Virus record (IMG/VR): IMGVR_UViG_3300009537_002640
Location: 62,001-126,000 of that record
DNA length: 64,000 bases
Strand: one strand, 5' to 3'
Part shown: piece after piece, positions 9,650 to 30,831 of the stretch
Layout: every line of letters starts with the position of its first letter
Numbering within the stretch: position 1 is the first letter of the stretch
Position numbers and translations under genes: made by a program
Notes under the pieces: generated by a model
Told to the model about the DNA's origin: nothing
Databases searched by the model: none
The model's input: the letters and a program-made list of their open reading frames with translations, nothing else

Positions 9650-10210
9650 TTATTGCCATTCCTGCAATTTGTAAAAACGGTGGGCTGCTAGATAATCCCC
9701 CTCTAAAAAATACTCTTGTGGGATAACGCAATACTCTTTGAACCCATTTCTATCTAGCACTTTAATAGAGCCTATGTTGCCTTCTACCACACCCGCTTCA
9801 ATCTTATTCATGTTGAGTCTATTGAAGCAATAATCTGAGAGAAGACTCACTACCTCGGTAGCTATACCTGCACCCCAGTAGTTTTCTTCCCCTATCATGT
9901 ATCCAACTTCTGCTCGTCTAGAAATCCAATCAATGCTATTTATAGATGTTGTCCCTATATAGTTGAGATACTCGTTGTCTTGAACTAGTGCATCCTTAAC
10001 TTTATCATAGGACAAATTGGACATCATTGCGAACCTCATTTCCCTTTGTCCATCTGGAATTGTTATTTCCTCTCTACACAAAGGTATGCGACCGGCGAAC
10101 ATATATCTATTAACCCTATGGTCATTAAGCCAATCTATGTATTTAGCAGTCACGTGACGGTCTGTGAATTTTACCAGTCTAACCTTGCTGCCCTTCAAGT
10201 ATTCCATCAC
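9650..10210 (-). CDS. GNAT N-acetyltransferase (PseH/RimL-like)
   Basis: YIDWLND, AEVGYMIGE..YWGAGIATE, LNMNKIEAGV..NIGSIKVLDRNGF. Confidence 0.85.
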   Translation of the reverse strand: MMEYLKGSKVRLVKFTDRHVTAKYIDWLNDHRVNRYMFAGRIPLCREEITIPDGQREMRFAMMSNLSYDKVKDALVQDNEYLNYIGTTSINSIDWISRRAEVGYMIGEENYWGAGIATEVVSLLSDYCFNRLNMNKIEAGVVEGNIGSIKVLDRNGFKEYCVIPQEYFLEGDYLAAHRFYKLQEWQ

Positions 10211-10458
10211 ATCACCCGCGTGTATTTTATTTCATCCGTATCTTGCCTAAACTCTACAGCGAACTTCTTAATCCTTCGCATATCACTTCCGCGAACCTCG
10301 GTGCGCTTAAATACACCTTGTTTAATAACCTCTCTCCAGCTCACATAAACAACAGTCCACTCTTTGCCAGAGTTTCTAGAGGTGCCATCTTCAGCATACA
10401 ACTTGGCTTCCTTTGTTAATACAGCTTCATATAGCTTTACTATAGCTGGGTCTATCAT
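10207..10458 (-). CDS. Hypothetical protein
   Basis: 83-aa ORF with 4-nt start/stop overlaps on both sides. Confidence 0.6.
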   Translation of the reverse strand: MIDPAIVKLYEAVLTKEAKLYAEDGTSRNSGKEWTVVYVSWREVIKQGVFKRTEVRGSDMRRIKKFAVEFRQDTDEIKYTRVM

Positions 10459-10877
10459 TGTTTACCTCCCAATTGATCCATAGCTCGTGCAACAAGTTCA
10501 CTGGAACTCTGTGCCTTTTCACCACCTAGATTCCATACGAGCTTTATGTCTAGTTCTTCACACAAAGCAACCTCGGGAGTATTTTCATTCTTCCTGTCGC
10601 CACCATTCCCAAAATACATCACACCGGCCCTATGTTCCCTTAGAGCCTCACACACCGTATCGTCGCTGTCGTCAACTGGAACTACATACTCTACGTTTTC
10701 AAGATTCAATAATATCTCGCAGCGTTCTTCCCATGGCATAAACACGTAGCCCTTCTTTCTCTTGAGCCAGGCGTCACTATTGAGGATGATAAGAACTTTG
10801 TCCACTTTAGCAGCATCGTTTATCATCCTCAGGTGCCCAATATGCAACGGGTCAAAACCACCAGACAAAGCTATCAT
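10455..10877 (-). CDS. HxGH cytidylyltransferase (TagD/glycerol-3-phosphate cytidylyltransferase-like)
   Basis: SGGFDPLHIGHL, LNSDAWL.RKKG, FGNGGDR, SSS. Confidence 0.88.
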   Translation of the reverse strand: MIALSGGFDPLHIGHLRMINDAAKVDKVLIILNSDAWLKRKKGYVFMPWEERCEILLNLENVEYVVPVDDSDDTVCEALREHRAGVMYFGNGGDRKNENTPEVALCEELDIKLVWNLGGEKAQSSSELVARAMDQLGGKQ

Positions 10878-11587
10878 ACCATTGCATCCTTTATAGCCTT
10901 ATTTAAGTCTCCGTGCTTATCATACTCTCTTGTTAAAGCTACCAACATATCGTAATCTTCTTTAGTATCGAATGAAAAATCTTTGATTTTCTGACTGATT
11001 TGACTATTAGGCCGATTATTTAGAAATGGATAAATATCATACTTGGTGCCTACCCTGTACATATATGGGCTAACGTGCTCTCTCATCTGTTGGTCTTTGG
11101 CATATTTCCATGTTTCAGCCAACATCCAATAAGGAAATATTTCTACATCAGTTCCGTCTGGATATGGATTAGGAGATATCAACCCATTGTTTCCCATAAA
11201 GCCATTGTATCCTCTACTAAGATATTCAATCAACATTTCGTCTATGATATATCCTTGAATGAGAGGACAGTCTGCCGTAACCCTAACTATTAGGTTAATT
11301 CCCACTCTTCTGGCTGCTTGGAAATATCTATCCACTAAATCGTCAGAATCTCCAAAATAAACACTAAACCGGCCGTCCACAACTTCAGTAAACTCACCCT
11401 TGCTGTCTCGCTCTAAAAACTCTTGTTTATCATACTCTGGCATAGCAAGCACAATCCTCTGTGGTACTGCTGCACTCTTAACACCTTCCAAGACTCGCTG
11501 TAATGTATATTTGCCATTGATATCCTGATATGTCTTTCTAGGAAATCTATTAGAACCTGTGCGTGCCTGAATTATAACTCCAATCAT
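10874..11587 (-). CDS. SpsF/PseF-like CMP-sugar cytidylyltransferase
   Basis: IIQARTGSNRFPRK, DLVDRY, IVRVTADCPL, YPDGTDVE, REHVSPY, FDTKEDY. Start moved to ATG 11587, which follows a GGAG RBS. Confidence 0.88.
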   Translation of the reverse strand: MIGVIIQARTGSNRFPRKTYQDINGKYTLQRVLEGVKSAAVPQRIVLAMPEYDKQEFLERDSKGEFTEVVDGRFSVYFGDSDDLVDRYFQAARRVGINLIVRVTADCPLIQGYIIDEMLIEYLSRGYNGFMGNNGLISPNPYPDGTDVEIFPYWMLAETWKYAKDQQMREHVSPYMYRVGTKYDIYPFLNNRPNSQISQKIKDFSFDTKEDYDMLVALTREYDKHGDLNKAIKDAMV

Positions 11588-11675
11588 TCTACACTCCAAC
11601 TTATAAAAGCTTTCGCACCTACCCCCTAAGATATTATGGTAAGTGCCCGAATAAACACAATATTACCTGCTTAGT

Positions 11676-12527
11676 TTAACTGCTTGTTTTGACATTATTT
11701 AAATCCTCGATAATGCTACATATTCTAGCAGAACCCCTGCCATCAATATAGCTCTTAGCGAATCTACTCAAAGACTCTCTTTTGTAACTACTCTCTAACA
11801 ATTCCTCCACATGGCCCTTAAGACGCAACATATCACTCTCTATACATCCCTCTGGAAACATTTTTATGTTAGTGAGCTGATGTTCATACTGAGGAATTGC
11901 GATTGTGGGTAGCCCGAAACACATAGCTTGTATCAGAGTAAGCCCACCGTTAGTTATTCCTATCATACAGTCTTGCATGGCGTTATAGTAGTCATCCTCA
12001 GTTAAAACCTCTACGTTCTTAAAAAACATCTTGAAATTAGAATGGTTTATACTCCTAGCCACTATCACTGGCACATCCATAGATTCTAGCATTCTGACTA
12101 CTCTGTATGCCAAATTATTAGCGTCAAAGCCTCCCATGGCAACAAATGCTGTTTTAGACTTAGTGTCCAGTCTATATGTTTCGCTATAAGAGGGCTTCGG
12201 TATAGCAAAGTACTTCGCGCCCTGATACTGTGCAAGTGGATTATAAATAGCGCTAACGCTTGCGTCTACCAACTCTACATCTTCTTCGGCACCATCTATA
12301 AGCACAACCTTTACTCCCGCAGCTTTCGCCTTAAGTATCAAGTCCCTTTGGGTGTGTATATGGTCAACTACAAGAACCTTTGCTTCTGGATTACATTCCC
12401 TATTCTGAACCCAAGATGTAACATGACCTCTGGAGGATAGTTCGCGTGCAATTTCCAATAATCTGTATAAATGCCCGGTACCTATTTCACGCTTCTCTCC
12501 ATGTTCACAAAACAAAGAAACATGCAT
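11676..12527 (-). CDS. PseG/SpsG-like nucleotide-sugar hydrolase (GT-B fold)
   Basis: IGTGHLYRLLEIA, VAMGGFD, ITNGGLTL..AMCFGLP, EHQL, IDGRGSARI. Confidence 0.82.
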   Translation of the reverse strand: MHVSLFCEHGEKREIGTGHLYRLLEIARELSSRGHVTSWVQNRECNPEAKVLVVDHIHTQRDLILKAKAAGVKVVLIDGAEEDVELVDASVSAIYNPLAQYQGAKYFAIPKPSYSETYRLDTKSKTAFVAMGGFDANNLAYRVVRMLESMDVPVIVARSINHSNFKMFFKNVEVLTEDDYYNAMQDCMIGITNGGLTLIQAMCFGLPTIAIPQYEHQLTNIKMFPEGCIESDMLRLKGHVEELLESSYKRESLSRFAKSYIDGRGSARICSIIEDLNNVKTSS

Positions 12528-13351
12528 TATGAATATCTCCTATAAGGCACTGACCCTTGTTCTATATCCTGCAACCCTATCGTACCATCTCCAAGCATTG
12601 ACTCATGTTCGCGTATGGCATCTATCATGTCTCTCATCATTCTTGGGTCAGCTGATACAGCATTATCTGGAGAGCCATCATTCAAGTCAAGCGTAAAGTG
12701 CTTTTCTACAACTGTAGCTCCCATAAATACAGATAGGGATGGGACTAAAATATCATTAGTGTGGTCACTATACCCAACCTCTATCCTTCCGTGCAATAAC
12801 CTGCGTAAAGTTTTAATTGCACTCAGGTTTACCTCATGTTCTGGTGTTGGATAAGAAGAAACGCAATGCAACACGGCCAGTGAATTTACGTCTGGCAAGC
12901 ATGTGAGTGCGCTAGAAAGCTCAGCCGGGTTAGCCATTCCAGTAGACATCACTACCTTTAGTGCCGCATATCTTTTTGCACACTCGTTAATTAGAACCAA
13001 TTGAATGCGGTTTGTTAAGTCCATAGATGCTATCTTAACCCTTCTAACCCCCAGGTCTTCAACTAAGAATGCTAAAGAGTGCTCGTCAAACGGAGTGGAA
13101 AAAAATTCAATGCCAACTTTATCAGCGTGCCACTTAACATCAGCCGTTTGCTCATAGGACAGCTCGCACCTCTTTAGAATCTCGTATGCCCCTTGAGATG
13201 GATTAGACCTAAGGTCCGCCTGATAAGTTTGAAACTTAATGGCGTCTGCCCCGGCCTCTTTGGCTGCTTCGACAAGAGCCATTGCTTTTCCAACATCACC
13301 GCCATGATTTATTCCAGCTTCTGCAATTATAAACGCTTCTTTCTGATACAT
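12527..13351 (-). CDS. neuB: Nonulosonate synthase (NeuB/PseI/SpsE family), short form
   Basis: IIAEAGINHGGD, DAIKFQTY, FFSTPFD, KIAS, MSTGM, LHCVSSYP, GYSDHT, VEKHFTLD. Start set at ATG 13351 (GAGGAG RBS). Confidence 0.92.
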   Translation of the reverse strand: MYQKEAFIIAEAGINHGGDVGKAMALVEAAKEAGADAIKFQTYQADLRSNPSQGAYEILKRCELSYEQTADVKWHADKVGIEFFSTPFDEHSLAFLVEDLGVRRVKIASMDLTNRIQLVLINECAKRYAALKVVMSTGMANPAELSSALTCLPDVNSLAVLHCVSSYPTPEHEVNLSAIKTLRRLLHGRIEVGYSDHTNDILVPSLSVFMGATVVEKHFTLDLNDGSPDNAVSADPRMMRDMIDAIREHESMLGDGTIGLQDIEQGSVPYRRYS

Positions 13352-13362
13352 CTTCTCTCCTC

Positions 13363-15111
13363 TTACTCCACAGTTACACTTTTGGCCAAATTTCTTGGCT
13401 TGTCTATATTGCACCCGCGCAAATCAGCTACATGATATGCCAATAACTGAAGCACCACTGACGCTGTAAATACCGTGGCACTTTCGTGGTGTTCTGGTAT
13501 CTTAATGACTTTATCCACAATATGTTCTGCCAACTCATCGTTTTCGCCTACCACTGCAATTGTAAAAGCACCCCGAGCCTTTACTTCTTCAATATTGGAT
13601 AATACCTTTGGATACACATTACTGTATCTATCTGCTATAAAAATACATGGCACGTTGTGATGTATCAAAGCTATGGGGCCATGCTTTAGTTCACCAGCCG
13701 GATAAGCTTCGGCATGCACATATGAAATCTCTTTTAGTTTCAGGGCTCCCTCTTGAGCAATCGGCACTCCATAGCCCCTACCTAAAAAAAACATAGAGTT
13801 TGCATGATAGATATTTTTTGCTGCTTGCGCAATATTTTGTTCCTGTTGTAACACTTGCTCCATCAATTCTGGAACCCTATATACCCAATCCGGCAAATCC
13901 ACTAATGCATTTGCCAACATAAACAACACGGCCACTTGAGCAGTAAAAGACTTGGTTGAGGCCACACTAATCTCAGGACCAGCCCATGTACAAATACTGG
14001 CGTCAGCCTCTCGTGTCATTGTAGAACCAAGGCGATTAATTACAGTCAGAACATATACATTTTTTTCTTTTGCGAGCTTGATAGCCTCTAGAGTATCAGC
14101 GGTCTCTCCTGATTGACTTACTGCGACCATCACTACATCATCATCCAGAACTCTATTATAGTATCTAAGCTCTGATGCTAATCTAACATCACAATCTATC
14201 CCTTTCGATTCAAAATATATTTGGGCGGTTAGGCAAGCATGATAGCTGGTACCGCATGCAGTGAGCAGGATTTTCTTGTTCTGAAATTGATTCTTCTCAA
14301 CCAGTTCCATAATAGGAACCAGATTTCTTTCCCAGCATTCCCTGATAACTTCTGGTTGTTCAAAAATCTCTTTGTGCATATAGGTATCATGATTTTGATG
14401 CCCCAAGACACCAAACACATCACTCATAATACTAATCGTTTCTGCTCTTGTCTCGTTGCCATTTGCATCGTATAGTTTAATAGAGCCTGATGCAAGTTCA
14501 GCTGTTTGACCATCTTTCATCACTATAGCCTCACTGGCATGACCAATAAGCGCATAGATATCAGACGCCACCGCTGCACCTTTCTCGCAAACACCAATTA
14601 CCAGTGGAGATTGTTTACACGCCAACACTATTTTATCTGGCTCATTTGGAGACATTGCTACGAACGCATAAGAACCCTTGAGCAGTGGAAGGGTCTGTTG
14701 GAGCCGCATAAGTAATGTTCCATCGAAGCTATTAATAACACCAGCGGCTATTTCGGTGTCTGTTTGGGATACTGGATTATACCCCTCGGACAATTCTTTG
14801 TAGTTCTCTATTATCCCATTGTGTACCAATATTACATCACCCACCATATGCGGATGTGCATTAGTTTCATTCGGCTCCCCATGCGTGGCCCATCGTGTAT
14901 GACCAATAGCTATAGAAGATTTAACTGCTGTATCTAGCTTTTTGAAAAGATTAGATACCTCGCCCTTGGCTTTGATTAAGCTCACGCCATCCTCAAGCAA
15001 GTACGCTATACCCGCTGAATCATAGCCCCTATACTCCAAGGTTTTAAGCCCGTGCTTAACATTATGAATCGCATTCTTAGCGTCACTAATGAAGCCTACT
15101 ATTCCACACAT
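13363..15111 (-). CDS. glmS: Glutamine--fructose-6-phosphate transaminase (isomerizing)
   Basis: MCGIVG, LEYRGYDSAG, GHTRWATHG, HNGIIENY, SQSGETADT, EGALKLKEISY, ELKHGP, DKPRNLAKSVTVE. Confidence 0.97.
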   Translation of the reverse strand: MCGIVGFISDAKNAIHNVKHGLKTLEYRGYDSAGIAYLLEDGVSLIKAKGEVSNLFKKLDTAVKSSIAIGHTRWATHGEPNETNAHPHMVGDVILVHNGIIENYKELSEGYNPVSQTDTEIAAGVINSFDGTLLMRLQQTLPLLKGSYAFVAMSPNEPDKIVLACKQSPLVIGVCEKGAAVASDIYALIGHASEAIVMKDGQTAELASGSIKLYDANGNETRAETISIMSDVFGVLGHQNHDTYMHKEIFEQPEVIRECWERNLVPIMELVEKNQFQNKKILLTACGTSYHACLTAQIYFESKGIDCDVRLASELRYYNRVLDDDVVMVAVSQSGETADTLEAIKLAKEKNVYVLTVINRLGSTMTREADASICTWAGPEISVASTKSFTAQVAVLFMLANALVDLPDWVYRVPELMEQVLQQEQNIAQAAKNIYHANSMFFLGRGYGVPIAQEGALKLKEISYVHAEAYPAGELKHGPIALIHHNVPCIFIADRYSNVYPKVLSNIEEVKARGAFTIAVVGENDELAEHIVDKVIKIPEHHESATVFTASVVLQLLAYHVADLRGCNIDKPRNLAKSVTVE

Positions 15112-15119
15112 TTATTACC

Positions 15120-15833
15120 TCACCATGCACTTAGTCCACCGTCTACTACTAAATTCTGTCCCGTAATATAACTAGAGAGTGGGCTGAGCAAAAATAGAAT
15201 TGCATTCACAATTTCTTCAGGCTGTGCCATTCTTTGCATAGGCACTCGGTCTGAATATAGAAAATCGAATTGGGCATCATGGTTCTGCTGGATGCCGCCA
15301 GGACTCACTGCATTAACTCTAACACCCCTGGAAGCTAACAATACAGCTTGATATTTGGTTAACTGTATTACTCCTGCCTTAGATGCGCCATAAGCTACAG
15401 CATTGAATTCTTTTTCATCTCCCATATAAATACGAAAATCAGGACTGAGACATCCATATATACTAGCAACATTAACTATGCTAGCATTTTTGAGAGATTT
15501 GCTAAACCAATATATACAACTATTGGTTCCTGAAACATTAACGGAGAGCGTCTTTTCGAACTCATCTCTAGTAACATGTTTATCTGTACCTTTACATCCA
15601 ATCGCAGCGTTGTTAACCAAACCATCCAGGTACCCATATTTTGCGGTCACCCTGTGAAATAATTGAGATATAGAATGCTCATCAGACAAGTCCAAATCAT
15701 AATCGGCGTCATGTAAATCTGCACCTATGGGATTTGCTCCCTCTACGGTTAAGGCTCTCATAATATGCTGACCCAGAAATCCAGCCGAACCAGTCACCAA
15801 TATATTCTTGTCTTTAAGTTGGAATGTACACAT
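15120..15833 (-). CDS. SDR oxidoreductase (PtmA-like, nonulosonate-cluster type)
   Basis: VTGSAGFLG, LVNNAA, ASIYG..PDFRIY, YGASK, VNAVSPGG, ITGQNLVVDGG. Confidence 0.9.
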   Translation of the reverse strand: MCTFQLKDKNILVTGSAGFLGQHIMRALTVEGANPIGADLHDADYDLDLSDEHSISQLFHRVTAKYGYLDGLVNNAAIGCKGTDKHVTRDEFEKTLSVNVSGTNSCIYWFSKSLKNASIVNVASIYGCLSPDFRIYMGDEKEFNAVAYGASKAGVIQLTKYQAVLLASRGVRVNAVSPGGIQQNHDAQFDFLYSDRVPMQRMAQPEEIVNAILFLLSPLSSYITGQNLVVDGGLSAW

Positions 15834-15834
15834 A

Positions 15835-16140
15835 TCAATACTCTATATACTGAATCATATTTCCTATAAAATCTGCCAGGTTTCCCTCATCTATCTCTAT
15901 ATTTTCTTCTCTGATATTAAGCCCGCCATCTTTACTCATGAACTTAGATATAACCCTGTTGTCTCTAAGGGCCATCTTGTAAAAAGTCTTAGCTGCCCCT
16001 TTAACAGAATCATCAGAGTTGTTCAAAGTAATATTACAATTGGAAACAACCACCTTGAGATTCTTCTCTCGTATGTTATCCAGAGTCTTATCGAACTCTC
16101 CCATGTCACATGTAATATTACAATTAGTTATACTTAGCAT
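15835..16140 (-). CDS. Hypothetical protein
   Basis: 101-aa ORF filling the gap between two enzyme genes; the motif NCNIT occurs twice. Confidence 0.6.
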   Translation of the reverse strand: MLSITNCNITCDMGEFDKTLDNIREKNLKVVVSNCNITLNNSDDSVKGAAKTFYKMALRDNRVISKFMSKDGGLNIREENIEIDEGNLADFIGNMIQYIEY

Positions 16141-16141
16141 C

Positions 16142-17368
16142 TTATCTCCTGTAAAACTTCAGAACTTTCCTTACTGCTTCTATTACATCTGTCACGTCCT
16201 GGTCAGTTAATTTAGAGGACAGTGGTAACGAGATTGTTCTGTCTGAAACCCATTGTGCATTGGGGAAATCTTTTGCTGTCCAACCATAAGTCTTAGTATA
16301 ATAAGGGTGCGTGTGAATTGCCTGATAATGAACCCCTACACCAATACCCTCTTCTTTTAGTGCACCTAGGACAAAATCTCTATTAACCCTAAGTTGGTCT
16401 AACTTCAACTCAATAGTATATAGATGGTGCCCATGCTTAATGTTAGAGGGGTATTCGGCTGGAGTATATAGTGGTAATCCAGACAGCTGCTCGTTGTATT
16501 GTCTCCATATATGATTTCTGCGTTGCCACGACGCTTCGATGCGTTGTAACTGGCAAACACCTATTGACGCCACCAAGTCCATCATATTGTACTTAAAACC
16601 AGGAGCCAGCACTTTGTAGTGTTGGAAACCTTCTGCACCATAACGATTATGGGCATTCCTAGATAACCCATGTAGAGACATCATTCTGACTTCTTTCTCA
16701 ATCTCCTCGTTATCTGTAATCAGCATTCCTCCCTCGCCACAAGAGATGTTCTTAGTGACATAGAAAGAGAACGCACCAACATCTCCAAACGTACCGGCAT
16801 GTTTTCCGTCTATAGTGGTCTCTATGGCATGAGCACAATCCTCTATAACATACAGACTGTATCGTTTGGCTATCTCTGTTATTGGCTCCATATCACATGG
16901 CATCCCACACATGTGAACTGGAATGATAGCCTTGGTGCGTGGAGTTATCTTAGATTCGATTTGCTTCCAATCAATGTTCTGTGTCTTGCGACTAATATCA
17001 CAAAGCACAGGCTTCAACCCACTGTGAACGATAGAAGATATGGTCGCAGTGAATGTAAGGTCTGTGCTTATTACCTCATCGCCAGGTTGAAGGCCCAGTG
17101 ACACAAGAGCAAGATGTAGCGCAGCAGTACAAGAGGAGGTTCCGACTGCATACTTACTTCCTTTGTATGCAGAGAACAGCTTCTCAAATGCTATGGTTTT
17201 TGGACCAGTACTTAACCATCCCGACTTTAATGTGTTAACCACTTCATCGATTTCCGGCTGTTGTATATCAGGGCTACCAAAGACTAGAAAATTCTGTCTA
17301 ACTGGTGTCCCGCCCTCAACGGCTGGAATACTATTGGTCACTGTTTTCGGTGCTACGCTAAAACTCAT
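16142..17368 (-). CDS. DegT/DnrJ/EryC1/StrS sugar aminotransferase (PseC/SpsC-like)
   Basis: SGWLSTGPK, SCTAALHLA, IIPVHMCG, IEDCAHA, FSFYVTKNISCGEGG, GFKYNM, SLPLS. Confidence 0.93.
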   Translation of the reverse strand: MSFSVAPKTVTNSIPAVEGGTPVRQNFLVFGSPDIQQPEIDEVVNTLKSGWLSTGPKTIAFEKLFSAYKGSKYAVGTSSCTAALHLALVSLGLQPGDEVISTDLTFTATISSIVHSGLKPVLCDISRKTQNIDWKQIESKITPRTKAIIPVHMCGMPCDMEPITEIAKRYSLYVIEDCAHAIETTIDGKHAGTFGDVGAFSFYVTKNISCGEGGMLITDNEEIEKEVRMMSLHGLSRNAHNRYGAEGFQHYKVLAPGFKYNMMDLVASIGVCQLQRIEASWQRRNHIWRQYNEQLSGLPLYTPAEYPSNIKHGHHLYTIELKLDQLRVNRDFVLGALKEEGIGVGVHYQAIHTHPYYTKTYGWTAKDFPNAQWVSDRTISLPLSSKLTDQDVTDVIEAVRKVLKFYRR

Positions 17369-17369
17369 C

Positions 17370-18314
17370 TTACTTTATATACTCCGCATAATGTGTTAGG
17401 AACGATCCTACGTTCTCATGTTTTTTGATAACTAAAGGAAAGAGCAAAGATTCAGCTTCATCCATAGTAAGGTTTCTTTCAAACTTAACTCTTCTTCCGT
17501 AGCCGCCTGGTTTAATCTGCTTCTTCCAATGACTAAACCTATAGTAAGCCGAAAAGAATGCCCACCTGTCTTCTGGTGAGATTGCCCTAATGTCACTCAC
17601 CTTAAACTCCACAGGCTCAACTAAGCGTTTCGCCAAGTCTGAGTTTCTTACTATCTTTCTCAGCAAGCCTCTTCGCCTGCTACTATTTTGCAAATCTTTA
17701 GCACTATATCCAAGACAACTATACTTATCAGTGTCTCTTAGTACAGCCTTAAGCTTTTCATTCTTAAGTCCTTGTGGGACAAAGCCAACAAACTCTCTAA
17801 GTATTGGTGGTGCTATAACATCTGCAGAATATTGAATCAGCTTCAATGGGTCTACTCTACCTGCCGCAAGATGCTTCTTGACCATCTTCTTATAGGTAGT
17901 CTTGGTAAAATATTTCTGGTCGCCGTATCTTGATCCATACTTATACGTGTGGCTCCATTGCCTATCGCTCTTACTATATGCGCATGAAAAAGATTTGATG
18001 AGCATATCGCCGAATTTCTTTTGCACAGACTTTGGAAACTTATCAATGATAGCATCTGTAAAGATGATATTCGAGTCTCCCATGCCATATGTTTTATTCT
18101 CGCTGTCGCTTAGCATTTTCTCCATTCTAGATGTAAGCAAATCGAACAGCTGCTCTTTGTCTTTTTTTCGTGCGCCTTCATAAAGCGCTAACCACTCTTG
18201 GTTGCTAAAACTAATATCGCTTTCATATGCAGATATGAAGTCCATAAAAACCTGTGGTGATTTCTTATACATCTTAACCAGGGATTGTGTTCCCCCTTGA
18301 AAATCAAAACTCAT
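17370..18314 (-). CDS. Hypothetical protein (basic, probably helical)
   Basis: 314-aa in-operon ORF; no motif recognised. Confidence 0.7.
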   Translation of the reverse strand: MSFDFQGGTQSLVKMYKKSPQVFMDFISAYESDISFSNQEWLALYEGARKKDKEQLFDLLTSRMEKMLSDSENKTYGMGDSNIIFTDAIIDKFPKSVQKKFGDMLIKSFSCAYSKSDRQWSHTYKYGSRYGDQKYFTKTTYKKMVKKHLAAGRVDPLKLIQYSADVIAPPILREFVGFVPQGLKNEKLKAVLRDTDKYSCLGYSAKDLQNSSRRRGLLRKIVRNSDLAKRLVEPVEFKVSDIRAISPEDRWAFFSAYYRFSHWKKQIKPGGYGRRVKFERNLTMDEAESLLFPLVIKKHENVGSFLTHYAEYIK

Positions 18315-18327
18315 TATAAGCCTTTCG

Positions 18328-18570
18328 TTATATCTTATATTTATCTATGAATGAATTAGTGTCTTTCGTTTCTAGACAACTGCTACCTCTAGTCCAGTTG
18401 CCATCTCCCGTATATATGTTTATACCCCAAATGTCCTCGCCACTTAAAGCGTCAACCACTTTATTGGAGCGATAAATATAAGTAATTTTTCCATTACCAT
18501 CATTCTGCCCACCAGTAATAGGCGGCTTTAGTGTCCACTGATAAAGAAACTGAAGAACCGGGTCAATCAT
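18328..18570 (-). CDS. Hypothetical protein
   Basis: 80-aa ORF with an ATGA overlap with the upstream gene. Confidence 0.55.
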   Translation of the reverse strand: MIDPVLQFLYQWTLKPPITGGQNDGNGKITYIYRSNKVVDALSGEDIWGINIYTGDGNWTRGSSCLETKDTNSFIDKYKI

Positions 18571-19715
18571 TCGTCAAACCCTCTAAGTTCATCTGCGGTA
18601 AATTGCTCAACATTGTCAGATGTATATTCGAATGATTCTACCTTTGGCTCATCAGGATAGCTAATATCCCACCCAAGACTTCTGTCAGTAACTCCTGGCG
18701 GAACAATCTTGTAATACTTGCCACAGTCTACGGTGTACAATACCTCTGTCTTTGATATCAGGTCTTCATGTATCTTCTCGTAACCCCTCAGCCCAATGAA
18801 CTCTACAGGGATGCCGGGAGCAAATGTTTCAGCAAACGCCATAATGCTTGTGGCTTTAAGCTTGGGTATGAATATCTCGCCGCCTATTGTGTTGTTAAGG
18901 GCAAACAGATTTAGATTAACCGCTTCATCCATTGACATAAAGAATCTGGTCATATCTTTGTGCGTAACTTTAACTTCGCCTTCTTTAGCCTGCTGTTCAA
19001 ACAATTGTCTCACAGAACCATTGGAACCATAAACGTTTCCATATCTTGTGCAAGTAAAGACTGTCCCATTTTTGCCAGAATAATTGTTGCCGTTGATAAA
19101 TACTTGTTCAGCAACAAACTTTGTTCCACCATACAAGGTGGCTGGCGCACAGGCTTTATCTGTAGAAACCAGAAGCGCCTTACCTACGTTGTTCTCTATA
19201 CAGGACTCTAAAACATTCACGCTTCCTATTACATTGCTCTTCACAGCTTCAATTGGATTATAAGTGCAGGTTTCCACTCGCTTCATACAGGCAGCATGAA
19301 TACAAACATCCACACCACGCAAAGCTCGCTCTAATCTTTTCCTATCCCTTATATCACCTATCAAATATCGTATGTTTATCTTGTCGGAAAACTTGGCTCT
19401 CATTCTTGCCTGCTTTAATTCACAGCGACTAAAGATGATAACCTTCTTAGCCACGTCAACTATACGCTCTGTTAAAGCATGTCCAAGAGAACCCGTGCCA
19501 CCAGTGATAAGCACAACTTTCCCACGAACGGCGTCTAGATCAGAACCGTCTCGTTTGTATTTAGTCTTTCCTGACATTTCAAGGAACTGGTCATGCGTAT
19601 AGAACATACGCCCAGAAGGTTTGCGTTGGGCTACAAGTTTGCCTTCCTTGTCCCAGTTTCGCAAGGTTTGAACAGAAACCCCAAGTTTTTCAGCCATTTC
19701 AGTTGTCGAATACAC
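18567..19715 (-). CDS. pseB: UDP-GlcNAc 4,6-dehydratase (PseB/FlaA1-like) with N-terminal MerR/IS607-type HTH fusion
   Basis: aa 1-48 EMAEKLGVSVQTLRNWDKEGKL..RKPSGRMFY (HTH). Then ITGGTGSLG, FSRCELKQ, YNPIEAVKSN, STDKAC.PATLYGGTK, RYGNV.GS.GS, MTRF, GGEIFIPK, EKIHE. GTG start with GGAGG RBS. Confidence 0.9.
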   Translation of the reverse strand: MYSTTEMAEKLGVSVQTLRNWDKEGKLVAQRKPSGRMFYTHDQFLEMSGKTKYKRDGSDLDAVRGKVVLITGGTGSLGHALTERIVDVAKKVIIFSRCELKQARMRAKFSDKINIRYLIGDIRDRKRLERALRGVDVCIHAACMKRVETCTYNPIEAVKSNVIGSVNVLESCIENNVGKALLVSTDKACAPATLYGGTKFVAEQVFINGNNYSGKNGTVFTCTRYGNVYGSNGSVRQLFEQQAKEGEVKVTHKDMTRFFMSMDEAVNLNLFALNNTIGGEIFIPKLKATSIMAFAETFAPGIPVEFIGLRGYEKIHEDLISKTEVLYTVDCGKYYKIVPPGVTDRSLGWDISYPDEPKVESFEYTSDNVEQFTADELRGFDE

Positions 19716-19774: not shown

Positions 19775-19805
19775 ATTATGACACAAATGTATAAAAATGT
19801 GTTAA
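19775..19805 (-). promoter_or_regulatory. Putative sigma70-like promoter with 10-bp direct repeats in the spacer
   Basis: Minus strand reads TTAACA-19 nt-CATAAT with a TG extended -10. The spacer region holds ACATTTTTAT ACATTTGTGT. It lies in one of the few intergenic gaps. Confidence 0.4.
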
Positions 19806-21488: not shown

Positions 21489-21628
21489 GTTATCTTGCCT
21501 TTTGACTTAAGTGCCCCAATATACAATTCTCGTATGTCACTAAAACTTACATCATCCATACACTCTGCCATCAACAAACATAAGTACGCATGTTTGAACA
21601 AAACATTATACTGTATATCACCCAGCAT
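21473..21628 (-). CDS. Small hypothetical protein (51 aa, mini-ORF family member)
   Basis: Not in the track. MLGDIQYNVLFKHAYLCLLMAECMDDVSFSDIRELYIGALKSKGKITCLTK; it fills the gap and overlaps both neighbours. Confidence 0.5.
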   Translation of the reverse strand: MLGDIQYNVLFKHAYLCLLMAECMDDVSFSDIRELYIGALKSKGKITCLTK

Positions 21629-24113: not shown

Positions 24114-24118
24114 AGTTC

Positions 24119-25106: not shown

Positions 25107-25110
25107 AACA

Positions 25111-25878: not shown

Positions 25879-25889
25879 TTCTTCTCCTC

Positions 25890-25928: not shown

Positions 25929-25936
25929 GCACTATA

Positions 25937-26125: not shown

Positions 26126-26136
26126 GTTAGACCTCC

Positions 26137-26571: not shown

Positions 26572-26573
26572 TC

Positions 26574-29693: not shown

Positions 29694-29710
29694 TGCATCT
29701 CACCCTCCTG

Positions 29711-30830: not shown

Positions 30831-30831
30831 G

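What the first reader, a model, noticed from the sequence alone, without database searches (positions are those of the whole stretch)
9650..19715. Apparently complete pseudaminic/legionaminic-type pathway in a phage
Seen: dehydratase (18567), DegT aminotransferase (16142), GNAT (9650), PseG/SpsG-like hydrolase (11676), synthase (12527) and SpsF-like CMP-transferase (10874). Established: these are the six steps from UDP-GlcNAc to CMP-Pse (PseBCHGIF) or the Bacillus Sps route to CMP-Leg. Inference: host-independent synthesis of a CMP-5,7-diamino-nonulosonate.
Basis: partly seen in the sequence, partly recalled or inferred. Interest (0 to 1): 0.8.

Follow-up and report, generated by a model that had tools for sequence, protein, structure and literature searches.

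The report
Phage-borne pseudaminic-type sugar pathway island
A roughly 200-kb uncultivated tailed phage carries, next to its tail-fibre genes, a gene island that appears able to make activated bacterial "sialic-acid-like" nine-carbon sugars and attach them to something inside the infected cell, probably its own particle proteins; no cultured phage is known to do this.

Summary
All are on the minus strand, with Pfam E-values from 2e-6 (PseG-like; 3e-14 on the PseG model) to 1e-122.

None reaches the curated PseB/C/H/G/I/F cut-offs. The SpsF-like cytidylyltransferase gets no PseF hit. The best PseF-like gene (3470-4156) lies outside the stated range.

Several features favour a pseudaminic (L-series) route over a legionaminic one:
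- The dehydratase keeps the PseB-type Tyr.
- The aminotransferase falls on the PseC/ArnB side, clearly apart from LegC.
- There is a short PseG homologue and no NeuC.

The synthase type is unresolved. It lacks the SAF domain and scores higher on the NeuB model than on PseI.

The pathway is not host-independent. A genuine phage GlmS feeds it, but no GlmM or GlmU was seen in the window.

The six genes are a small part of an island of about 40 kb (93-32945 and beyond the window start). It holds three NulO synthases, at least two CMP-transferases, about seven candidate NulO transferases, tailoring enzymes and eight GT2/GT4 genes. No export or lipid-carrier machinery is present.

The core cassette, including an unusual HTH::PseB fusion, recurs in at least six other metagenomic contigs (L002, L009/L010, L011-L013, L023). 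NeuB clusters occur in at least 575 IMG/VR stretches but in almost no GenBank phages.

Verdict: a new variant of a known pathway. The acceptor is inferred, with virion proteins most likely.

The parts
18567..19715 (-). MerR-type HTH (residues 1-48) fused to a PseB-like UDP-GlcNAc 4,6-dehydratase
   Evidence: PF02719 4.7e-80 plus PF00376 MerR 3.2e-10. TIGR03589 PseB is the top model at 338 bits, below the 408 cut-off. Best PDB match is H. pylori PseB 2gn4 at 254 bits; the TDK...Y...K motif is kept. 41-42% identical to annotated PseB, 26% to LegB. The fusion is conserved in L002 and L009-L013.
18328..18570 (-). 80-aa ORF between the dehydratase and the aminotransferase, function unknown
   Evidence: No family hit. 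A 64-75 aa ORF occupies the same position in L009/L010 and L011, but BLAST finds no sequence similarity.
17370..18314 (-). 314-aa all-helical protein, unknown, not conserved in relatives
   Evidence: No Pfam or NCBIfam hit. Atlas gives only weak helical-repeat look-alikes. No homologue in related loci.
16142..17368 (-). DegT-family sugar 4-aminotransferase of PseC/ArnB type
   Evidence: PF01041 9.8e-123. ArnB model 358 bits, PseC 342, LegC 233, all below cut-off. Best PDB match is ArnB at 302 bits, with the PLP lysine aligned. 41% identical to B. toyonensis PseC, 29% to LegC. The tree separates it from LegC at 100/100.
15835..16140 (-). 101-aa ORF, unknown
   Evidence: No family hit and no homologue in related loci.
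15120..15833 (-). PtmA-like short-chain dehydrogenase
   Evidence: adh_short_C2 8.7e-44. Best NCBIfam model is NF006619 at 156 bits. 37% identical to the SDR of a Rhizobium Leg locus. Conserved in L011-L013 and in the Leptospira idonii locus.
13363..15111 (-). GlmS, glutamine--fructose-6-phosphate aminotransferase
   Evidence: TIGR01135 649 bits (cut-off 418) and NF001484 662 bits (cut-off 381), so it passes the curated cut-offs. The N-terminal Cys is present. Also present in L009/L010 and L011.
12527..13414 (-). Nonulosonic acid synthase #1, SAF-less NeuB/PseI homologue; likely start at 13351
   Evidence: PF03102 1.9e-65. NeuB_NnaB 256 bits, PseI 196 bits, both below cut-off. Best PDB match is 6ncs, a 290-aa SAF-less synthase. 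The catalytic/metal residue set is invariant. Sister to PseI in the small tree (96/95) but unresolved in the large tree.
11676..12527 (-). Short PseG/SpsG-like GT-B protein, candidate UDP-sugar hydrolase
   Evidence: TIGR03590 53 bits, 3.1e-14, below the 154 cut-off. AF2 model pLDDT 93 with a GT-B fold; C. jejuni PseG is among the PDB hits. hhalign to B. toyonensis PseG gives prob 97.7%, E 2e-12, with the N-terminal G-T-G-H-x-x-R motif aligned. The family is almost entirely metagenomic.
10874..11599 (-). SpsF-type (COG1861) cytidylyltransferase #1
   Evidence: PF02348 2.1e-16; no PseF or NeuA model hit. Best PDB match is 6oew 'cytidylyltransferase'. Homologous to the gene next to pseI in Azospirillum and to the gene inside the B. 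toyonensis pse operon. 43-61% conserved in related loci.
10455..10877 (-). 140-aa cytidylyl/adenylyl-transferase-like protein (RfaE-II/TagD-like)
   Evidence: PF01467 1.7e-10. RfaE domain II 49 bits, TagD 33 bits, both far below cut-off. Conserved in L002, L012 and L013.
10207..10458 (-). 83-aa ORF, unknown
   Evidence: No hit.
9650..10210 (-). GNAT (Acetyltransf_3) N-acetyltransferase, candidate for the PseH step
   Evidence: PF13302 3.3e-22. PseH model 34.6 bits (cut-off 93); the SpeG model scores slightly higher. Weak BLAST hit to B. toyonensis PseH, 1.6e-5. 48-53% conserved in L009 and L011-L013.
8339..9637 (-). Class-III (GSA-aminomutase-like) aminotransferase, conserved tailoring enzyme
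   Evidence: PF00202 1.5e-48; NF004856 354 bits, below cut-off. 48-60% conserved in all related cassettes.
7512..8342 (-). Left-handed beta-helix acyltransferase, alternative N- or O-acetyltransferase
   Evidence: Hexapep 4.8e-8; WcaF and NeuD/PglB family hits far below cut-off.
6442..7515 (-). TagB-fold GT-B protein, candidate CMP-nonulosonate transferase
   Evidence: PF04464 8.3e-8. NF046086 (BFO_1060 family) 59.6 bits versus TarB 33 bits. The BFO_1060 family was shown genetically to be the Pse/Leg-derivative transferases of T. forsythia (PMC5420450). 35-53% conserved in related loci.
5321..6445 (-). 374-aa GT-B protein of Glyphos_transf-like fold, second candidate transferase
   Evidence: No HMM hit. 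Atlas feature score 0.96 to viral clusters carrying PF04464, and structure TM 0.74-0.77 to Glyphos_transf proteins. Conserved in related loci.
4569..5324 (-). Maf/MptE-like protein, third kind of candidate nonulosonate transferase
   Evidence: PF01973 4.4e-4, below cut-off. 9 of 32 family members carry a PF01973 hit. AF2 model pLDDT 95.5; the top PDB fold hits are GT29 sialyltransferases with CMP and archaeal MptE, at weak E (8e-3 to 3e-2). The profile touches Maf 5mu5 at E 0.24.
4153..4569 (-). 138-aa HAD-IIIA phosphatase with a DxDGT motif
   Evidence: TIGR01689 capsule biosynthesis phosphatase 38 bits, 1.2e-9.
3470..4156 (-). PseF/NeuA-type CMP-nonulosonate synthetase (cytidylyltransferase #2)
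   Evidence: PF02348 2e-22. TIGR03584 PseF is the top model at 148 bits (cut-off 206). PDB CMP-Neu5Ac synthetases score 92-105 bits. 33% identical to PseF versus 30-32% to LegF, with bit scores of 117-119 versus 93-98.
2320..3480 (-). Polysaccharide pyruvyl transferase
   Evidence: PF04230 3.6e-21.
1439..2320 (-). SAM-dependent methyltransferase
   Evidence: Methyltransf_23 7.7e-16. Homologues in L009 and L012.
604..1434 (-). Nonulosonic acid synthase #2, SAF-less, of a virus-enriched clade
   Evidence: PF03102 4.1e-70. NeuB_NnaB 246 bits, PseI 173 bits. 33% identical to synthase #1. Sits in a 39-row clade made only of viral contigs, SH-aLRT 100.
93..593 (-). Cupin-fold protein
   Evidence: Cupin_1 1.9e-4, weak. 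A cupin lies in the equivalent region of L011.
19802..20893 (-). 363-aa GT-B protein always found just upstream of the HTH::PseB gene
   Evidence: No HMM hit. Atlas score 0.97 to viral clusters, and structure TM 0.74 to Glyphos_transf proteins. 35-48% conserved in L002 and L009-L013.
21618..22367 (-). 249-aa conserved protein of unknown function
   Evidence: No family hit. 45-66% identical homologues in L002, L009 and L013.
23118..32945 (-). Block of eight soluble glycosyltransferase genes: six GT2 genes, one of them a double GT2 of 711 aa, and two GT4
   Evidence: Pfam GT2/GT4 hits of 1e-7 to 1e-26 and PHROG glycosyltransferase hits. Most are conserved in L002. No TM segment in any of them.
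25937..26571 (-). Two small ORFs (62 and 144 aa) with hydrophobic segments inside the GT block
   Evidence: ORFs found; one Kyte-Doolittle segment above threshold in each. Role unknown.

Best explanation
The window is part of a 206-kb myovirus-like phage genome. Directly downstream of its tail and fibre genes, on the same strand, lies a glycosylation island of about 40 kb.

Proposed pathway (inferred from homology):
1. Phage GlmS raises GlcN-6-P supply.
2. Host GlmM and GlmU give UDP-GlcNAc.
3. The HTH::PseB enzyme performs C5-inverting 4,6-dehydration.
4. The PseC/ArnB-type aminotransferase adds the 4-amino group.
5. The GNAT (or the beta-helix acyltransferase) N-acylates it.
6. The short PseG homologue removes UDP.
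7. The SAF-less synthase condenses the product with PEP.
8. A cytidylyltransferase, either SpsF-type or PseF-type, gives the CMP-sugar.

The product is a CMP-activated 5,7-diamino-nonulosonate of the pseudaminic (L-series) type.

Other parts of the island:
- The SDR, class-III aminotransferase, methyltransferases and pyruvyl transferase tailor the sugar or glycan.
- Two further synthases, a HAD phosphatase and the second cytidylyltransferase probably supply at least one other nonulosonate.

Proposed use: soluble TagB/BFO_1060-like, Maf-like and GT2/GT4 transferases build the glycan on a cytoplasmic acceptor. Phage structural proteins are the most likely acceptor, because the island sits at the end of the structural module and has no lipid-carrier or export genes.

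Shown: gene content, homology, conserved residues and synteny. Inferred: every activity, the sugar's stereochemistry and the acceptor.
For: Phage identity:
- Tail sheath and baseplate PHROG hits.
- IMG/VR UViG of 206,495 bp.
- Uniform GC and strand across the window.

Pathway, step by step:
- Dehydratase: best model and best PDB match are PseB, with Tyr kept where SpsM, CapE and PglF have Met (PMC7439481).
- Aminotransferase: 41% identical to a Bacillus PseC, and separated from LegC at 100/100.
- PseG homology: hhalign prob 97.7% with the catalytic-His motif aligned, and a GT-B model of PseG size.
- Synthase: the residue set invariant across the aligned NeuB homologues, including the metal-binding His, is intact.
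- Cytidylyltransferases: the PseF model is the top hit for 3470-4156. The SpsF-type gene is homologous to the gene inside a Bacillus pse operon.
- GlmS passes the curated cut-offs.

Conservation:
- Same cassette, including the HTH fusion, in L002, L009/L010 and L011-L013. L023 carries most of the cassette too, but its N-terminus was not checked for the fusion.
- L013 also carries a thymidine kinase and a LAGLIDADG endonuclease.

Cytoplasmic acceptor:
- No protein of 65 aa or more in the island has a predicted TM segment typical of Wzx, Wzy or an initiating phosphoglycosyltransferase.
- There are several candidate CMP-sugar transferases.

Precedents:
- Megavirinae glycosylate virion fibrils using their own clusters of 6-33 genes, including a UDP-GlcNAc pathway (PMC10117803).
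- Mycobacteriophage capsid and tail-tube glycosylation, as summarised in PMC12619734.
Against: - No enzyme reaches its equivalog cut-off.
- The synthase scores higher on the NeuB model than on PseI, lacks the SAF domain, and is not resolved in the 124-row tree.
- The GNAT scores slightly better on the SpeG model than on PseH.
- The fold search cannot tell a PseG-type hydrolase from a GT1/GT28 transferase.
- The aminotransferase is as close to ArnB as to PseC.
- Nothing in the sequence identifies the acceptor.
- Two small hydrophobic ORFs lie inside the GT block.
- The TagB-like proteins, the TagD-like gene and the HAD phosphatase could equally make a polyol-phosphate polymer.
- No expression data could be found.
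Confidence: 0.55

Rival explanations
1. Same pathway, different acceptor. The phage remodels a host structure during infection: flagellin, S-layer or pilin by cytoplasmic O-glycosylation, or LPS/capsule through host export machinery. The purpose could be to block superinfection or to stop progeny being trapped on debris.
For: - Maf-like and BFO_1060-like transferases act on flagellin and S-layer glycans in bacteria (PMC5420450).
- The closest cellular locus is a Leptospira NulO cluster.
- Prophage-borne enzymes that modify host Pse or Leg are known (PMC12053666 and PMC6586298, listed).
Against: - No Gtr-type, Wzx/Wzy, ABC-exporter or initiating transferase genes in the island.
- The island sits at the end of the virion structural module on the same strand.
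- Roughly 40 kb of a lytic-looking jumbo genome is a large investment for host remodelling.
Confidence: 0.22
2. The product is legionaminic acid or another non-Pse isomer, made by a UDP-linked Sps-like route as in Bacillus subtilis.
For: - SpsF-type cytidylyltransferase, SpsG-like hydrolase and GNAT are the B. subtilis Sps set, which makes Leg (PMC7439481).
- Both window synthases score higher on the NeuB/LegI model than on PseI.
- A PtmA-like SDR is typical of Leg loci.
Against: - The dehydratase has the PseB/Pen-type Tyr, not the SpsM/PglF-type Met. [quoted passage not shown]
- The aminotransferase is separated from LegC at 100/100 and is 41% identical to a Bacillus PseC.
- No NeuC/LegG or LegB homologue is present.
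- The same SpsF-type gene also sits inside a Bacillus pse operon.
Confidence: 0.15
3. The TagB-fold proteins, the TagD-like nucleotidyltransferase and the HAD phosphatase build a teichoic-acid-like polyol-phosphate polymer. Nonulosonates are only a minor decoration.
For: - PF04464 Glyphos_transf hit, and TarB/TarF models hit weakly.
- The small cytidylyltransferase hits TagD at 33 bits.
- The HAD phosphatase hits the capsule-biosynthesis phosphatase family TIGR01689.
Against: - For every TagB-like protein with an HMM hit, the BFO_1060 nonulosonate-transferase model scores higher than TarB or TarF.
- There are three NulO synthases and two or three CMP-transferases, but no glycerol- or ribitol-phosphate dehydrogenase.
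Confidence: 0.1
4. The contig is not viral, or the island is a bacterial fragment joined to phage DNA by misassembly.
For: - IMG/VR contains some misclassified cellular fragments.
- The enzyme families are typical of bacteria.
Against: - GC, GC skew and strand are uniform across all 64 kb.
- The cassette recurs with the same lineage-specific HTH fusion in independent samples.
- The short PseG family was found in only one of 185,579 species genomes, at 23% identity.
- Atlas neighbours of the GT-B proteins are Uroviricota clusters.
Confidence: 0.03
5. The sugars are attached to phage DNA as a hypermodification that protects against restriction.
For: - A DNA-binding HTH is fused to the first pathway enzyme.
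- A nucleoside deoxyribosyltransferase-like gene lies inside the cassette of L009/L010, and a thymidine kinase lies next to it in L013.
- Phage glycosyltransferases that hypermodify DNA are known (cited in PMC12619734).
Against: - No hydroxymethylase or other base-modification gene is seen in the window.
- About fifteen transferases with methyl, pyruvyl and acetyl tailoring look like a complex protein-linked or polymer glycan.
- The HTH is more simply explained as autoregulation.
Confidence: 0.03

Closest known systems
CMP-pseudaminic acid pathway PseB-PseC-PseH-PseG-PseI-PseF (Helicobacter and Campylobacter; annotated loci L017 Klebsiella and L019 Parabacteroides)
   Same: - Same six reaction types and the same protein superfamilies.
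- PseB is the best model and best PDB hit, with its Tyr kept.
- A PseG homologue with the His motif aligned.
- The PseF model is the top hit for 3470-4156.

   Different: - All scores are below the equivalog cut-offs.
- 32-42% identity at best for the dehydratase, aminotransferase and PseF-like cytidylyltransferase.
- The synthase lacks the SAF domain.
- PseG is about 280 aa with a shortened N-domain and is not fused to PseH.
- An HTH is fused to PseB.
- Extra genes: a second SpsF-type cytidylyltransferase, GlmS, an SDR and a class-III aminotransferase.
- The replicon is a phage.
Bacillus routes: the B. thuringiensis/toyonensis pse operon (L018) and the B. subtilis Sps legionaminic acid pathway (PMC7439481)
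   Same: - An SpsF-type (COG1861) cytidylyltransferase sits inside the operon.
- GNAT acetyltransferase and PseG/SpsG-type hydrolase are present.
- The aminotransferase is 41% identical to the B. toyonensis PseC.

   Different: - One PseB-type dehydratase, instead of the Pen+Pal pair or the Met-type SpsM.
- No sporulation context.
- The names Pen, Pal, Pam, Pcp, Phy, Pdi and Ppa for the L018 order rest on my recollection of Li et al. 2015 (JBC). That paper is not in the held library.
Leptospira nonulosonic acid clusters (PMC3438082; L. idonii locus L022)
   Same: - The only cellular genome found carrying the short PseG-like family.
- Its locus has GNAT, SpsF-type cytidylyltransferase, PtmA-like SDR, SAF-less synthase, PseG-like and DegT (44% identical) together.
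- Best PDB hits for the synthase (6ncs) and cytidylyltransferase #1 (6oew) are, from memory, Leptospira proteins.

   Different: - Only 23-44% identity.
- No HTH fusion and no GlmS.
- L. interrogans was reported to have a Leg pathway with LegB, LegC and LegG, which are absent here.
Virus-encoded virion glycosylation: Megavirinae fibril glycan clusters (PMC10117803) and mycobacteriophage capsid/tail-tube glycans (Freeman 2023, as cited in PMC12619734)
   Same: A viral genome carries both nucleotide-sugar biosynthesis for rare bacterial-type amino sugars and the glycosyltransferases, clustered together. Megavirinae also have a UDP-GlcNAc pathway.
   Different: - No nonulosonic acid is reported for those viruses in the held papers: zero mentions of Pse or Leg in the Megavirinae and giant-virus papers that search returned.
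- The hosts are amoebae or mycobacteria.
- Here virion glycosylation is only inferred.
Phage- or prophage-encoded modifiers of host nonulosonic acids: EpaA/EpaB 8-epimerisation of Pse, and 4-O-acetyltransferases in Acinetobacter (PMC12053666, PMC6586298)
   Same: Mobile viral elements carrying enzymes that act on Pse or Leg.
   Different: Those elements add one or two tailoring enzymes to a host-made sugar on host capsule. Here the whole de novo route plus transferases is phage-borne.
Tannerella forsythia Pse/Leg-derivative transferases (BFO_1060 family, PMC5420450) and Maf flagellin nonulosonate transferases
   Same: - Soluble TagB-fold proteins with no TM segment, and NF046086 is their best model.
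- A Maf/MptE-like core whose nearest folds are CMP-sialyltransferases.

   Different: - All matches are far below the cut-offs (23-60 bits against 200; PF01973 20.5 against 34.6).
- The Maf-like protein is only 251 aa, against about 600 aa for Maf.
- Donor and acceptor are untested.

Membership tests
PseB, UDP-GlcNAc 4,6-dehydratase (inverting), TIGR03589 | Polysacc_synt_2 extended-SDR fold | tested here: met
   PF02719 269 bits covering 1-291 of 293 profile positions.
PseB, UDP-GlcNAc 4,6-dehydratase (inverting), TIGR03589 | Score at or above the curated equivalog cut-off | tested here: not met
   337.9 bits against a cut-off of 407.75. It is still the top model; FnlA scores 227 and LegB 52.
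PseB, UDP-GlcNAc 4,6-dehydratase (inverting), TIGR03589 | Catalytic Asp-Lys ... Tyr ... Lys, with Tyr where CapE, SpsM and PglF have Met | tested here: met
   The T-D-K ... Y-G-x-x-K motif aligns with H. pylori PseB and with annotated PseB and Pen. CapE shows Met in the same alignment. SpsM Met146 is described in PMC7439481.
PseB, UDP-GlcNAc 4,6-dehydratase (inverting), TIGR03589 | C5-inverting dehydratase activity on UDP-GlcNAc | not testable with these tools
   Needs an enzyme assay with NMR of the 4-keto product.
PseC aminotransferase, TIGR03588 | DegT fold with the PLP-binding lysine | tested here: met
   PF01041 410 bits. The lysine aligns with the ArnB PLP lysine.
PseC aminotransferase, TIGR03588 | Score at or above the equivalog cut-off, and the best-scoring model | tested here: not met
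   342.2 bits against 423.5. The ArnB model scores 358.5, also below its own cut-off.
PseC aminotransferase, TIGR03588 | Falls inside the PseC clade rather than the LegC clade | tested here: inconclusive
   Separated from LegC at 100/100. It lies in a polytomy with ArnB, the Leptospira DegT and the canonical PseC clade, not inside that clade.
PseH N-acetyltransferase, TIGR03585 | GNAT fold and equivalog score | tested here: not met
   The GNAT fold is present (PF13302 80 bits). The PseH model gives 34.6 bits against 93.1, and the SpeG model 41 bits.
PseG UDP-sugar hydrolase, TIGR03590 | Small GT-B protein with the N-terminal G-x-G-H-x-x-R catalytic-His motif | tested here: met
   AF2 model pLDDT 93 with a GT-B fold. 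G16, H19 and R22 are invariant in 40 family members. The motif aligns with B. toyonensis PseG, hhalign prob 97.7%.
PseG UDP-sugar hydrolase, TIGR03590 | Score at or above the equivalog cut-off | tested here: not met
   53.2 bits against 153.55, covering profile positions 80-278 only. No PDB sequence hit to PseG.
PseG UDP-sugar hydrolase, TIGR03590 | Hydrolyses the UDP-sugar rather than transferring it | not testable with these tools
   The fold search ranks GT1 and GT28 transferases above PseG, so sequence and fold cannot decide.
PseI pseudaminic acid synthase, TIGR03586 | NeuB TIM-barrel with metal- and PEP-binding residues | tested here: met
   PF03102 221 bits. E11, K39, Q41, K106, S109, H197, E216 and H218 are invariant in alignment A2.
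PseI pseudaminic acid synthase, TIGR03586 | Equivalog score, and PseI as the best model | tested here: not met
   PseI 196.4 bits against 340.25. The NeuB_NnaB model scores 255.7 against 399.65.
PseI pseudaminic acid synthase, TIGR03586 | C-terminal SAF (antifreeze-like) domain | tested here: not met
   The protein ends after the NeuB domain at about 274 aa. SAF-less synthases are known in environmental bacteria (PMC8208679), and one is solved (6ncs).
PseI pseudaminic acid synthase, TIGR03586 | Phylogenetic placement with PseI | tested here: inconclusive
   Sister to four PseI references at 96/95 in a 14-row tree. Unresolved in the 124-row tree.
   No PseF or NeuA hit; only weak KdsB-family hits. 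It is of the SpsF/COG1861 type.
PseF CMP-pseudaminic acid synthetase, TIGR03584 | Some gene in the island matches PseF at or above the cut-off | tested here: not met
   3470-4156 has PseF as its top model at 148.1 bits, against a cut-off of 205.7.
Bacillus subtilis Sps legionaminic acid route | SpsM-type retaining dehydratase with Met in the catalytic position | tested here: not met
   Tyr occupies that position in the window enzyme and in all six lineage relatives aligned (PMC7439481).
Campylobacter-type legionaminic acid pathway | LegB, LegC and NeuC-type LegG present | tested here: not met
   26% identity to LegB, 29% to LegC, and no protein with a NeuC hit.
GlmS, TIGR01135 | Equivalog score, with both the amidotransferase and the two SIS domains | tested here: met
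   649 bits against 418. GATase plus SIS domains are present.
BFO_1060 family nonulosonate transferases, NF046086 | Score at or above the model cut-off | tested here: not met
   59.6 bits for 6442-7515 and 23-46 bits for three paralogues beyond the window, against a cut-off of 200. It is nevertheless the best model for each.
Maf flagellin nonulosonate transferases, PF01973 core | Significant match to the MAF_flag10/MptE-like domain | tested here: inconclusive
   20.5 bits against 34.6. 9 of 32 family members carry the Pfam hit. The fold search puts sialyltransferases and MptE on top, but at E of about 1e-2.

The most novel reading that the evidence does not exclude
A lineage of large uncultivated phages makes several different bacterial sialic-acid-like sugars with its own enzymes: a pseudaminic-type sugar plus at least one from a virus-specific synthase clade. 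It then uses its own soluble transferases to coat its virion fibres or capsid with a nonulosonate-rich glycan. This would be a bacteriophage counterpart of giant-virus fibril glycosylation. Possible uses are masking the particle, tuning adsorption, or mimicking host surfaces.
Probability: 0.35. Interest if true: 0.8.

Novelty: new variant of a known kind. Interest (0 to 1): 0.62.

Why it matters
Nonulosonic acids (Pse, Leg, Neu) are treated as cell-surface sugars of bacteria, archaea and animals. In the libraries available here, a complete de novo route on a phage has not been described:
- PHROGs v4 has no family matching the synthase, the PseG-like protein, either cytidylyltransferase or the candidate transferases.
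- Only two uncultured records among 50,697 GenBank phage records carry a NeuB.
- Four full-text searches found no paper on the subject.

Yet at least 575 IMG/VR stretches encode NeuB relatives. Many of these sit with PseB, DegT and cytidylyltransferase genes and carry 2-3 synthase paralogues. The phenomenon is therefore widespread but uncharacterised.

If the glycan ends up on virions, phage particles could carry Pse-type epitopes. That would matter for host recognition, for environmental stickiness and for immune recognition of phages.

The divergent, compact enzymes are also candidate biocatalysts for CMP-Pse synthesis: the SAF-less synthase, the 280-aa PseG and the HTH::PseB fusion.

Tried and rejected
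Searches that found nothing or nothing useful:
- Megablast of the 10-kb region, and tblastn of the tail sheath, against 50,697 phage records gave no match, so no named relative exists.
- tblastn of GlmS against the phage collection returned mostly mislabelled bacterial contigs and was not used.
- PDB sequence search with the PseG-like protein gave only chance-level GT hits. Fold search plus hhalign was needed instead.
- Atlas search on the 314-aa ORF 17370-18314 gave only helical-repeat look-alikes below a useful score.
- Profile search of the Maf-like family against PDB hit Maf 5mu5 only at E 0.24.
- HP and D/E-D/E-G sialyltransferase motif search in the TagB-like families was inconclusive. 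The motifs occur but are not at invariant columns in my small alignments.
- Sigma-70 promoter and terminator scans were at shuffle level and give no operon boundaries. One 11/12 promoter-like site at 33009-32980 is noted only.
- Rfam found nothing in 1-36000. There are no tRNAs in the window.
- No public sequencing run was listed for the region.
- The search for the B. thuringiensis Pen/Pal paper failed because it is not in the held library. Freeman 2023 is not held either.

Readings rejected:
- Campylobacter-type Leg pathway: no LegB, LegC or NeuC.
- Bacterial contamination.

Reading weakened: 'synthase #1 is PseI' rests on the small tree only and did not survive denser sampling.

Full report
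**Observation.** All ORFs of any size in the window lie on the minus strand. GC is about 41% and GC skew is uniformly negative.
- 18567-19715: Polysacc_synt_2, 4.7e-80.
- 16142-17368: DegT, 9.8e-123.
- 12527-13414: NeuB, 1.9e-65.
- 10874-11599: CTP_transf_3, 2.1e-16.
- 9650-10210: GNAT, 3.3e-22.
- 11676-12527: PseG model TIGR03590, 3.1e-14.

The synthase most likely starts at 13351. The HMM match begins there, and the longer ORF would overlap glmS.

**The replicon.** The upstream part of the window encodes a tail sheath (61482-63938), a baseplate wedge protein (42509-45736) and very large fibre-like proteins. One of these is a 2185-aa protein with a ConA-like lectin domain. The source is IMG/VR UViG 3300009537_002640, a 206,495-bp contig. 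It has no relative in 50,697 GenBank phage records at DNA level or for the sheath protein. I therefore treat it as an uncultivated jumbo myovirus-like phage.

None passes its curated cut-off:
- PseB 338 vs 408. It is still the top model by a wide margin.
- PseC 342 vs 424, with ArnB slightly higher at 358.
- PseH 35 vs 93, with SpeG slightly higher.
- PseG 53 vs 154.
- PseI 196 vs 340, with the NeuB model higher at 256.
- The SpsF-like cytidylyltransferase has no PseF hit.

The best PseF-like gene is 3470-4156, at 148 vs 206. Strict membership is therefore not met for any step. The question becomes what the enzymes work like.

**Dehydratase.**
- The best solved relative is H. pylori PseB (2gn4, 254 bits).
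- The alignment keeps the T-D-K ... Y ... K motif, whereas CapE has Met in place of Tyr.
- The B. subtilis Leg enzyme SpsM also has Met (M146). Its mutant was fully rescued by pglF or pen-pal, while pseB restored Leg production only partially or not at all (PMC7439481).
- Against annotated reference loci, the phage enzyme is 41-42% identical to PseB, 36% to Pen and 26% to LegB.
- Tyr is present in all six lineage relatives.

This favours the C5-inverting, Pse-type first step.

**Aminotransferase.**
- Best PDB match is ArnB (302 bits), with the PLP lysine aligned. H. pylori PseC scores 137 bits.
- It is 41% identical to the B. toyonensis PseC, 33% and 32% to the Klebsiella and Parabacteroides PseC, and 29% to LegC.
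- In a tree, LegC forms a separate clade at 100/100. The phage clade sits on the PseC/ArnB side in an unresolved polytomy with ArnB, a Leptospira DegT and the canonical PseC clade.

ArnB and PseC both aminate 4-keto sugars of the beta-L series (established knowledge). This is consistent with, but does not prove, the PseC reaction.

**PseG-like protein.**
- A database search found 40 homologues of 252-292 aa, all from metagenomes; four are labelled SpsG by JGI.
- G16, H19 and R22 are invariant.
- The AF2 model is confident (pLDDT 93) and shows a GT-B fold.
- Foldseek ranks many larger GT1/GT28 transferases first. C. jejuni PseG, which is the same size, ranks 32 and 50 with the highest identity listed (16-17%).
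- Profile-sequence comparison with the B. toyonensis PseG gives 97.7% probability (E 2e-12). The N-terminal E-I-G-T-G-H-x-x-R motif aligns residue for residue, and the phage family lacks an insertion of about 55 residues.

So it is a PseG homologue. Sequence cannot settle whether it hydrolyses or transfers.

**Synthase.**
- Both window synthases lack the SAF domain. Their best solved match is the 290-aa SAF-less enzyme 6ncs.
- Catalytic and metal-binding positions are invariant.
- SAF-less synthases are known from environmental bacteria (PMC8208679).
- In a 14-row tree, synthase #1 with its phage relatives is sister to four PseI references (96/95), and synthase #2 goes with NeuB/LegI.
- In a 124-row tree that includes IMG/VR sequences, the deep nodes collapse and synthase #1 groups only weakly with a Leptospira enzyme.
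- In that larger tree, synthase #2 falls in a 39-row clade made only of viral contigs (SH-aLRT 100).

Synthase typing is therefore unresolved.

**Cytidylyltransferases.**
- 10874-11599 is of the SpsF/COG1861 type (PDB 6oew).
- It is homologous to the gene adjacent to pseI in an Azospirillum flagellin locus. It is also homologous to the gene between pseC and pseG in the B. toyonensis pse operon.
- From memory, that operon position is Pcp, the CMP-Pse synthetase of Li et al. 2015. I could not retrieve the paper.
- 3470-4156 is NeuA/PseF-like.

Either enzyme could activate the sugar.

**Supply.**
- 13363-15111 is a bona fide GlmS: 649 bits against a cut-off of 418.
- No GlmM or GlmU is in the window.
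- The pathway therefore depends on host enzymes and pools, and 'host-independent' is overstated.
- A viral GlmS has a precedent in the Megavirinae UDP-GlcNAc pathway (PMC10117803).

**The island.** The six genes are embedded in a much larger glycan island. Reading in the direction of transcription:
- Eight GT2/GT4 genes (32945-23118).
- A DUF4326 gene, and conserved ORFs with no family hit.
- A GT-B protein (19802-20893), always found upstream of the dehydratase in relatives.
- The cassette discussed above.
- A class-III aminotransferase and a beta-helix acyltransferase.
- Two TagB-fold GT-B proteins, 6442-7515 and 5321-6445.
- A Maf/MptE-like protein, 4569-5324.
- A HAD-IIIA phosphatase, 4153-4569.
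- The PseF-like cytidylyltransferase, a pyruvyl transferase, a methyltransferase, synthase #2 and a cupin.

Fetching the contig beyond the window start shows that the island continues. That stretch holds a second GNAT, a third NeuB (235 aa), two methylases that match the Pse-associated methylase model, three more BFO_1060-like proteins and a GT2.

The BFO_1060 family comprises the genetically proven Pse/Leg-derivative transferases of T. forsythia. They are soluble and TagB-like (PMC5420450). In every phage paralogue with an HMM hit, this model outscores TarB and TarF, though all are below the cut-off.

No island protein of 65 aa or more has the membrane topology expected of a flippase, polymerase or initiating transferase. 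Two small ORFs at 25937-26571 do have hydrophobic segments.

**Conservation.** The cassette recurs in these contigs:

| Locus | Contig size | Source or note |
|---|---|---|
| L002 | 158 kb | IMG/VR |
| L009/L010 | 468 kb | ENA |
| L011 | 90 kb | |
| L012 | 41 kb | |
| L013 | 30 kb | also carries a thymidine kinase and a LAGLIDADG endonuclease |
| L023 | 103 kb | |

- The shared genes are the GT-B gene, HTH::PseB, DegT, SDR, (GlmS), synthase, PseG-like, SpsF-type cytidylyltransferase, GNAT, class-III aminotransferase, the TagB-like pair, a methyltransferase, the Maf-like gene and the second cytidylyltransferase.
- Several relatives insert a formyltransferase, which suggests N-formyl variants.
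- The HTH fusion is present in every lineage member aligned for it (L002, L009-L013) and absent from the cellular PseBs and other viral PseBs compared.
- The short PseG family was found in only one of 185,579 species genomes. That genome is Leptospira idonii, at 23% identity, and its locus has the same family set.

**How common in viruses.**
- Among the best 80 loci, within 8 kb of the NeuB gene, 45 also carry a PseB/Pen-type dehydratase, 41 a DegT, 32 a NeuA/PseF-type cytidylyltransferase and 15 a NeuC.
- Many loci have two or three NeuB paralogues.
- Some carry canonical PseC-clade aminotransferases and others LegC-clade ones.
- By contrast, only two uncultured GenBank phage records carry a NeuB.
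- PHROGs has no family for the synthase, the PseG-like protein, either cytidylyltransferase, the TagB-like protein or the Maf-like protein.
- Full-text searches found no description of a phage-encoded nonulosonate pathway. They found only prophage tailoring enzymes for host Pse/Leg and giant-virus clusters for other rare sugars.

**Interpretation.**
- With about 0.8 confidence, the cassette makes a CMP-activated 5,7-diamino-nonulosonate.
- With about 0.65 confidence, it is of the pseudaminic series. This rests on the dehydratase, the aminotransferase and the hydrolase, and on the absence of LegB, LegC and NeuC.
- The extra synthases, the phosphatase and the second cytidylyltransferase point to at least one more nonulosonate. 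It may be made by a 9-phosphate route, but that is speculative. The support is the adjacent HAD phosphatase and an S-G-H-E motif in synthase #2 that I recall from animal-type synthases.
- The acceptor is inferred. The many soluble transferases, the lack of export machinery and the position at the end of the structural module on the same strand favour cytoplasmic glycosylation of phage structural proteins.
- Host flagellin or S-layer remodelling is the main rival.
- A teichoic-like polymer, DNA modification and misassembly are less likely.

Overall confidence in the combined statement is 0.55.

**Verdict.** This is a real, conserved, phage-borne variant of a known pathway. It has distinctive architecture: the HTH::PseB fusion, the SAF-less synthase, the short PseG and a phage GlmS. 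It sits inside an unusually nonulosonate-centred glycosylation island. It is not unique to this phage, but it is essentially uncharacterised.

Noticed in passing
window 18567-19715 (residues 1-48 of the product); also L002, L009-L013: A MerR/HTH_17-type DNA-binding domain is fused to the N-terminus of the PseB-like dehydratase. The fusion is kept in all six related contigs aligned for it and is absent from the cellular PseBs and other viral PseBs compared. Its role (autoregulation or localisation) is unexplained.
   Followed up: partly
L021 10842-19259 (same contig, beyond window position 1): The glycan island continues about 9 kb past the window start. That stretch holds a second GNAT, a third NeuB homologue (235 aa), two methylases matching the Pse-associated methylase model TIGR03587, three more BFO_1060-like GT-B proteins and a GT2.
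   Followed up: partly
window 4153-4569: A 138-aa HAD-IIIA phosphatase (DxDGT motif, TIGR01689 at 38 bits) sits between the Maf-like gene and the PseF-like cytidylyltransferase. Synthase #2 has an S-G-H-E motif where the other synthases in alignment A2 have S-D-H or S-N-H. Together these hint at a nonulosonate-9-phosphate route.
   Followed up: partly
window 604-1434; IMG/VR loci L026-L102: Synthase #2 belongs to a well-supported clade of 39 sequences found only on viral contigs. These often sit beside a second, PseI-like synthase. At least 575 IMG/VR stretches encode NeuB relatives, while GenBank phages have almost none.
   Followed up: partly
window 25937-26125 and 26137-26571: Two small minus-strand ORFs (62 and 144 aa) with hydrophobic, TM-like segments lie in the middle of the glycosyltransferase block. 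They are the only membrane-like products in the island. They could be holin-like or an anchor.
   Followed up: no
L009 5540-6397, L011 10834-11739, L012 10786-11661: Relatives carry an ArnA-like formyltransferase, after the ArnB-like aminotransferase in L009/L010 and after the PseG-like gene in L011 and L012. The window phage has none, which suggests N-formyl versus N-acetyl variants of the sugar within the lineage. L012 and L013 also carry B12-radical-SAM enzymes in the cassette.
   Followed up: no
window 30570-31025 and 30832-31506: A 151-aa ORF with no family hit overlaps the 3' part of a 224-aa GT2 gene by about 190 nt in another frame. It is either a spurious ORF or a frameshifted GT2 C-terminus.
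   Followed up: no
window 22369-22671: A DUF4326 protein (1.2e-21) is encoded between the GT block and the nonulosonate cassette. Its function is unknown and it has no homologue in the related loci.
   Followed up: no
window 35952-42509 and 32995-35817: A 2185-aa protein with a ConA-like lectin/glucanase domain (Laminin_G_3, 3.2e-13) and a 940-aa protein with no hits lie immediately upstream of the island. Both have 16-17% Ser+Thr. They are the obvious candidate acceptors or fibres.
   Followed up: no
window 33009-32980 (minus strand): An 11/12 match to the sigma-70 consensus (TTAACA, 18 nt, TATAAT) sits exactly between the 940-aa fibre-like gene and the first glycosyltransferase. Overall promoter-like counts are at shuffle level, so this is only a lead.
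   Followed up: no
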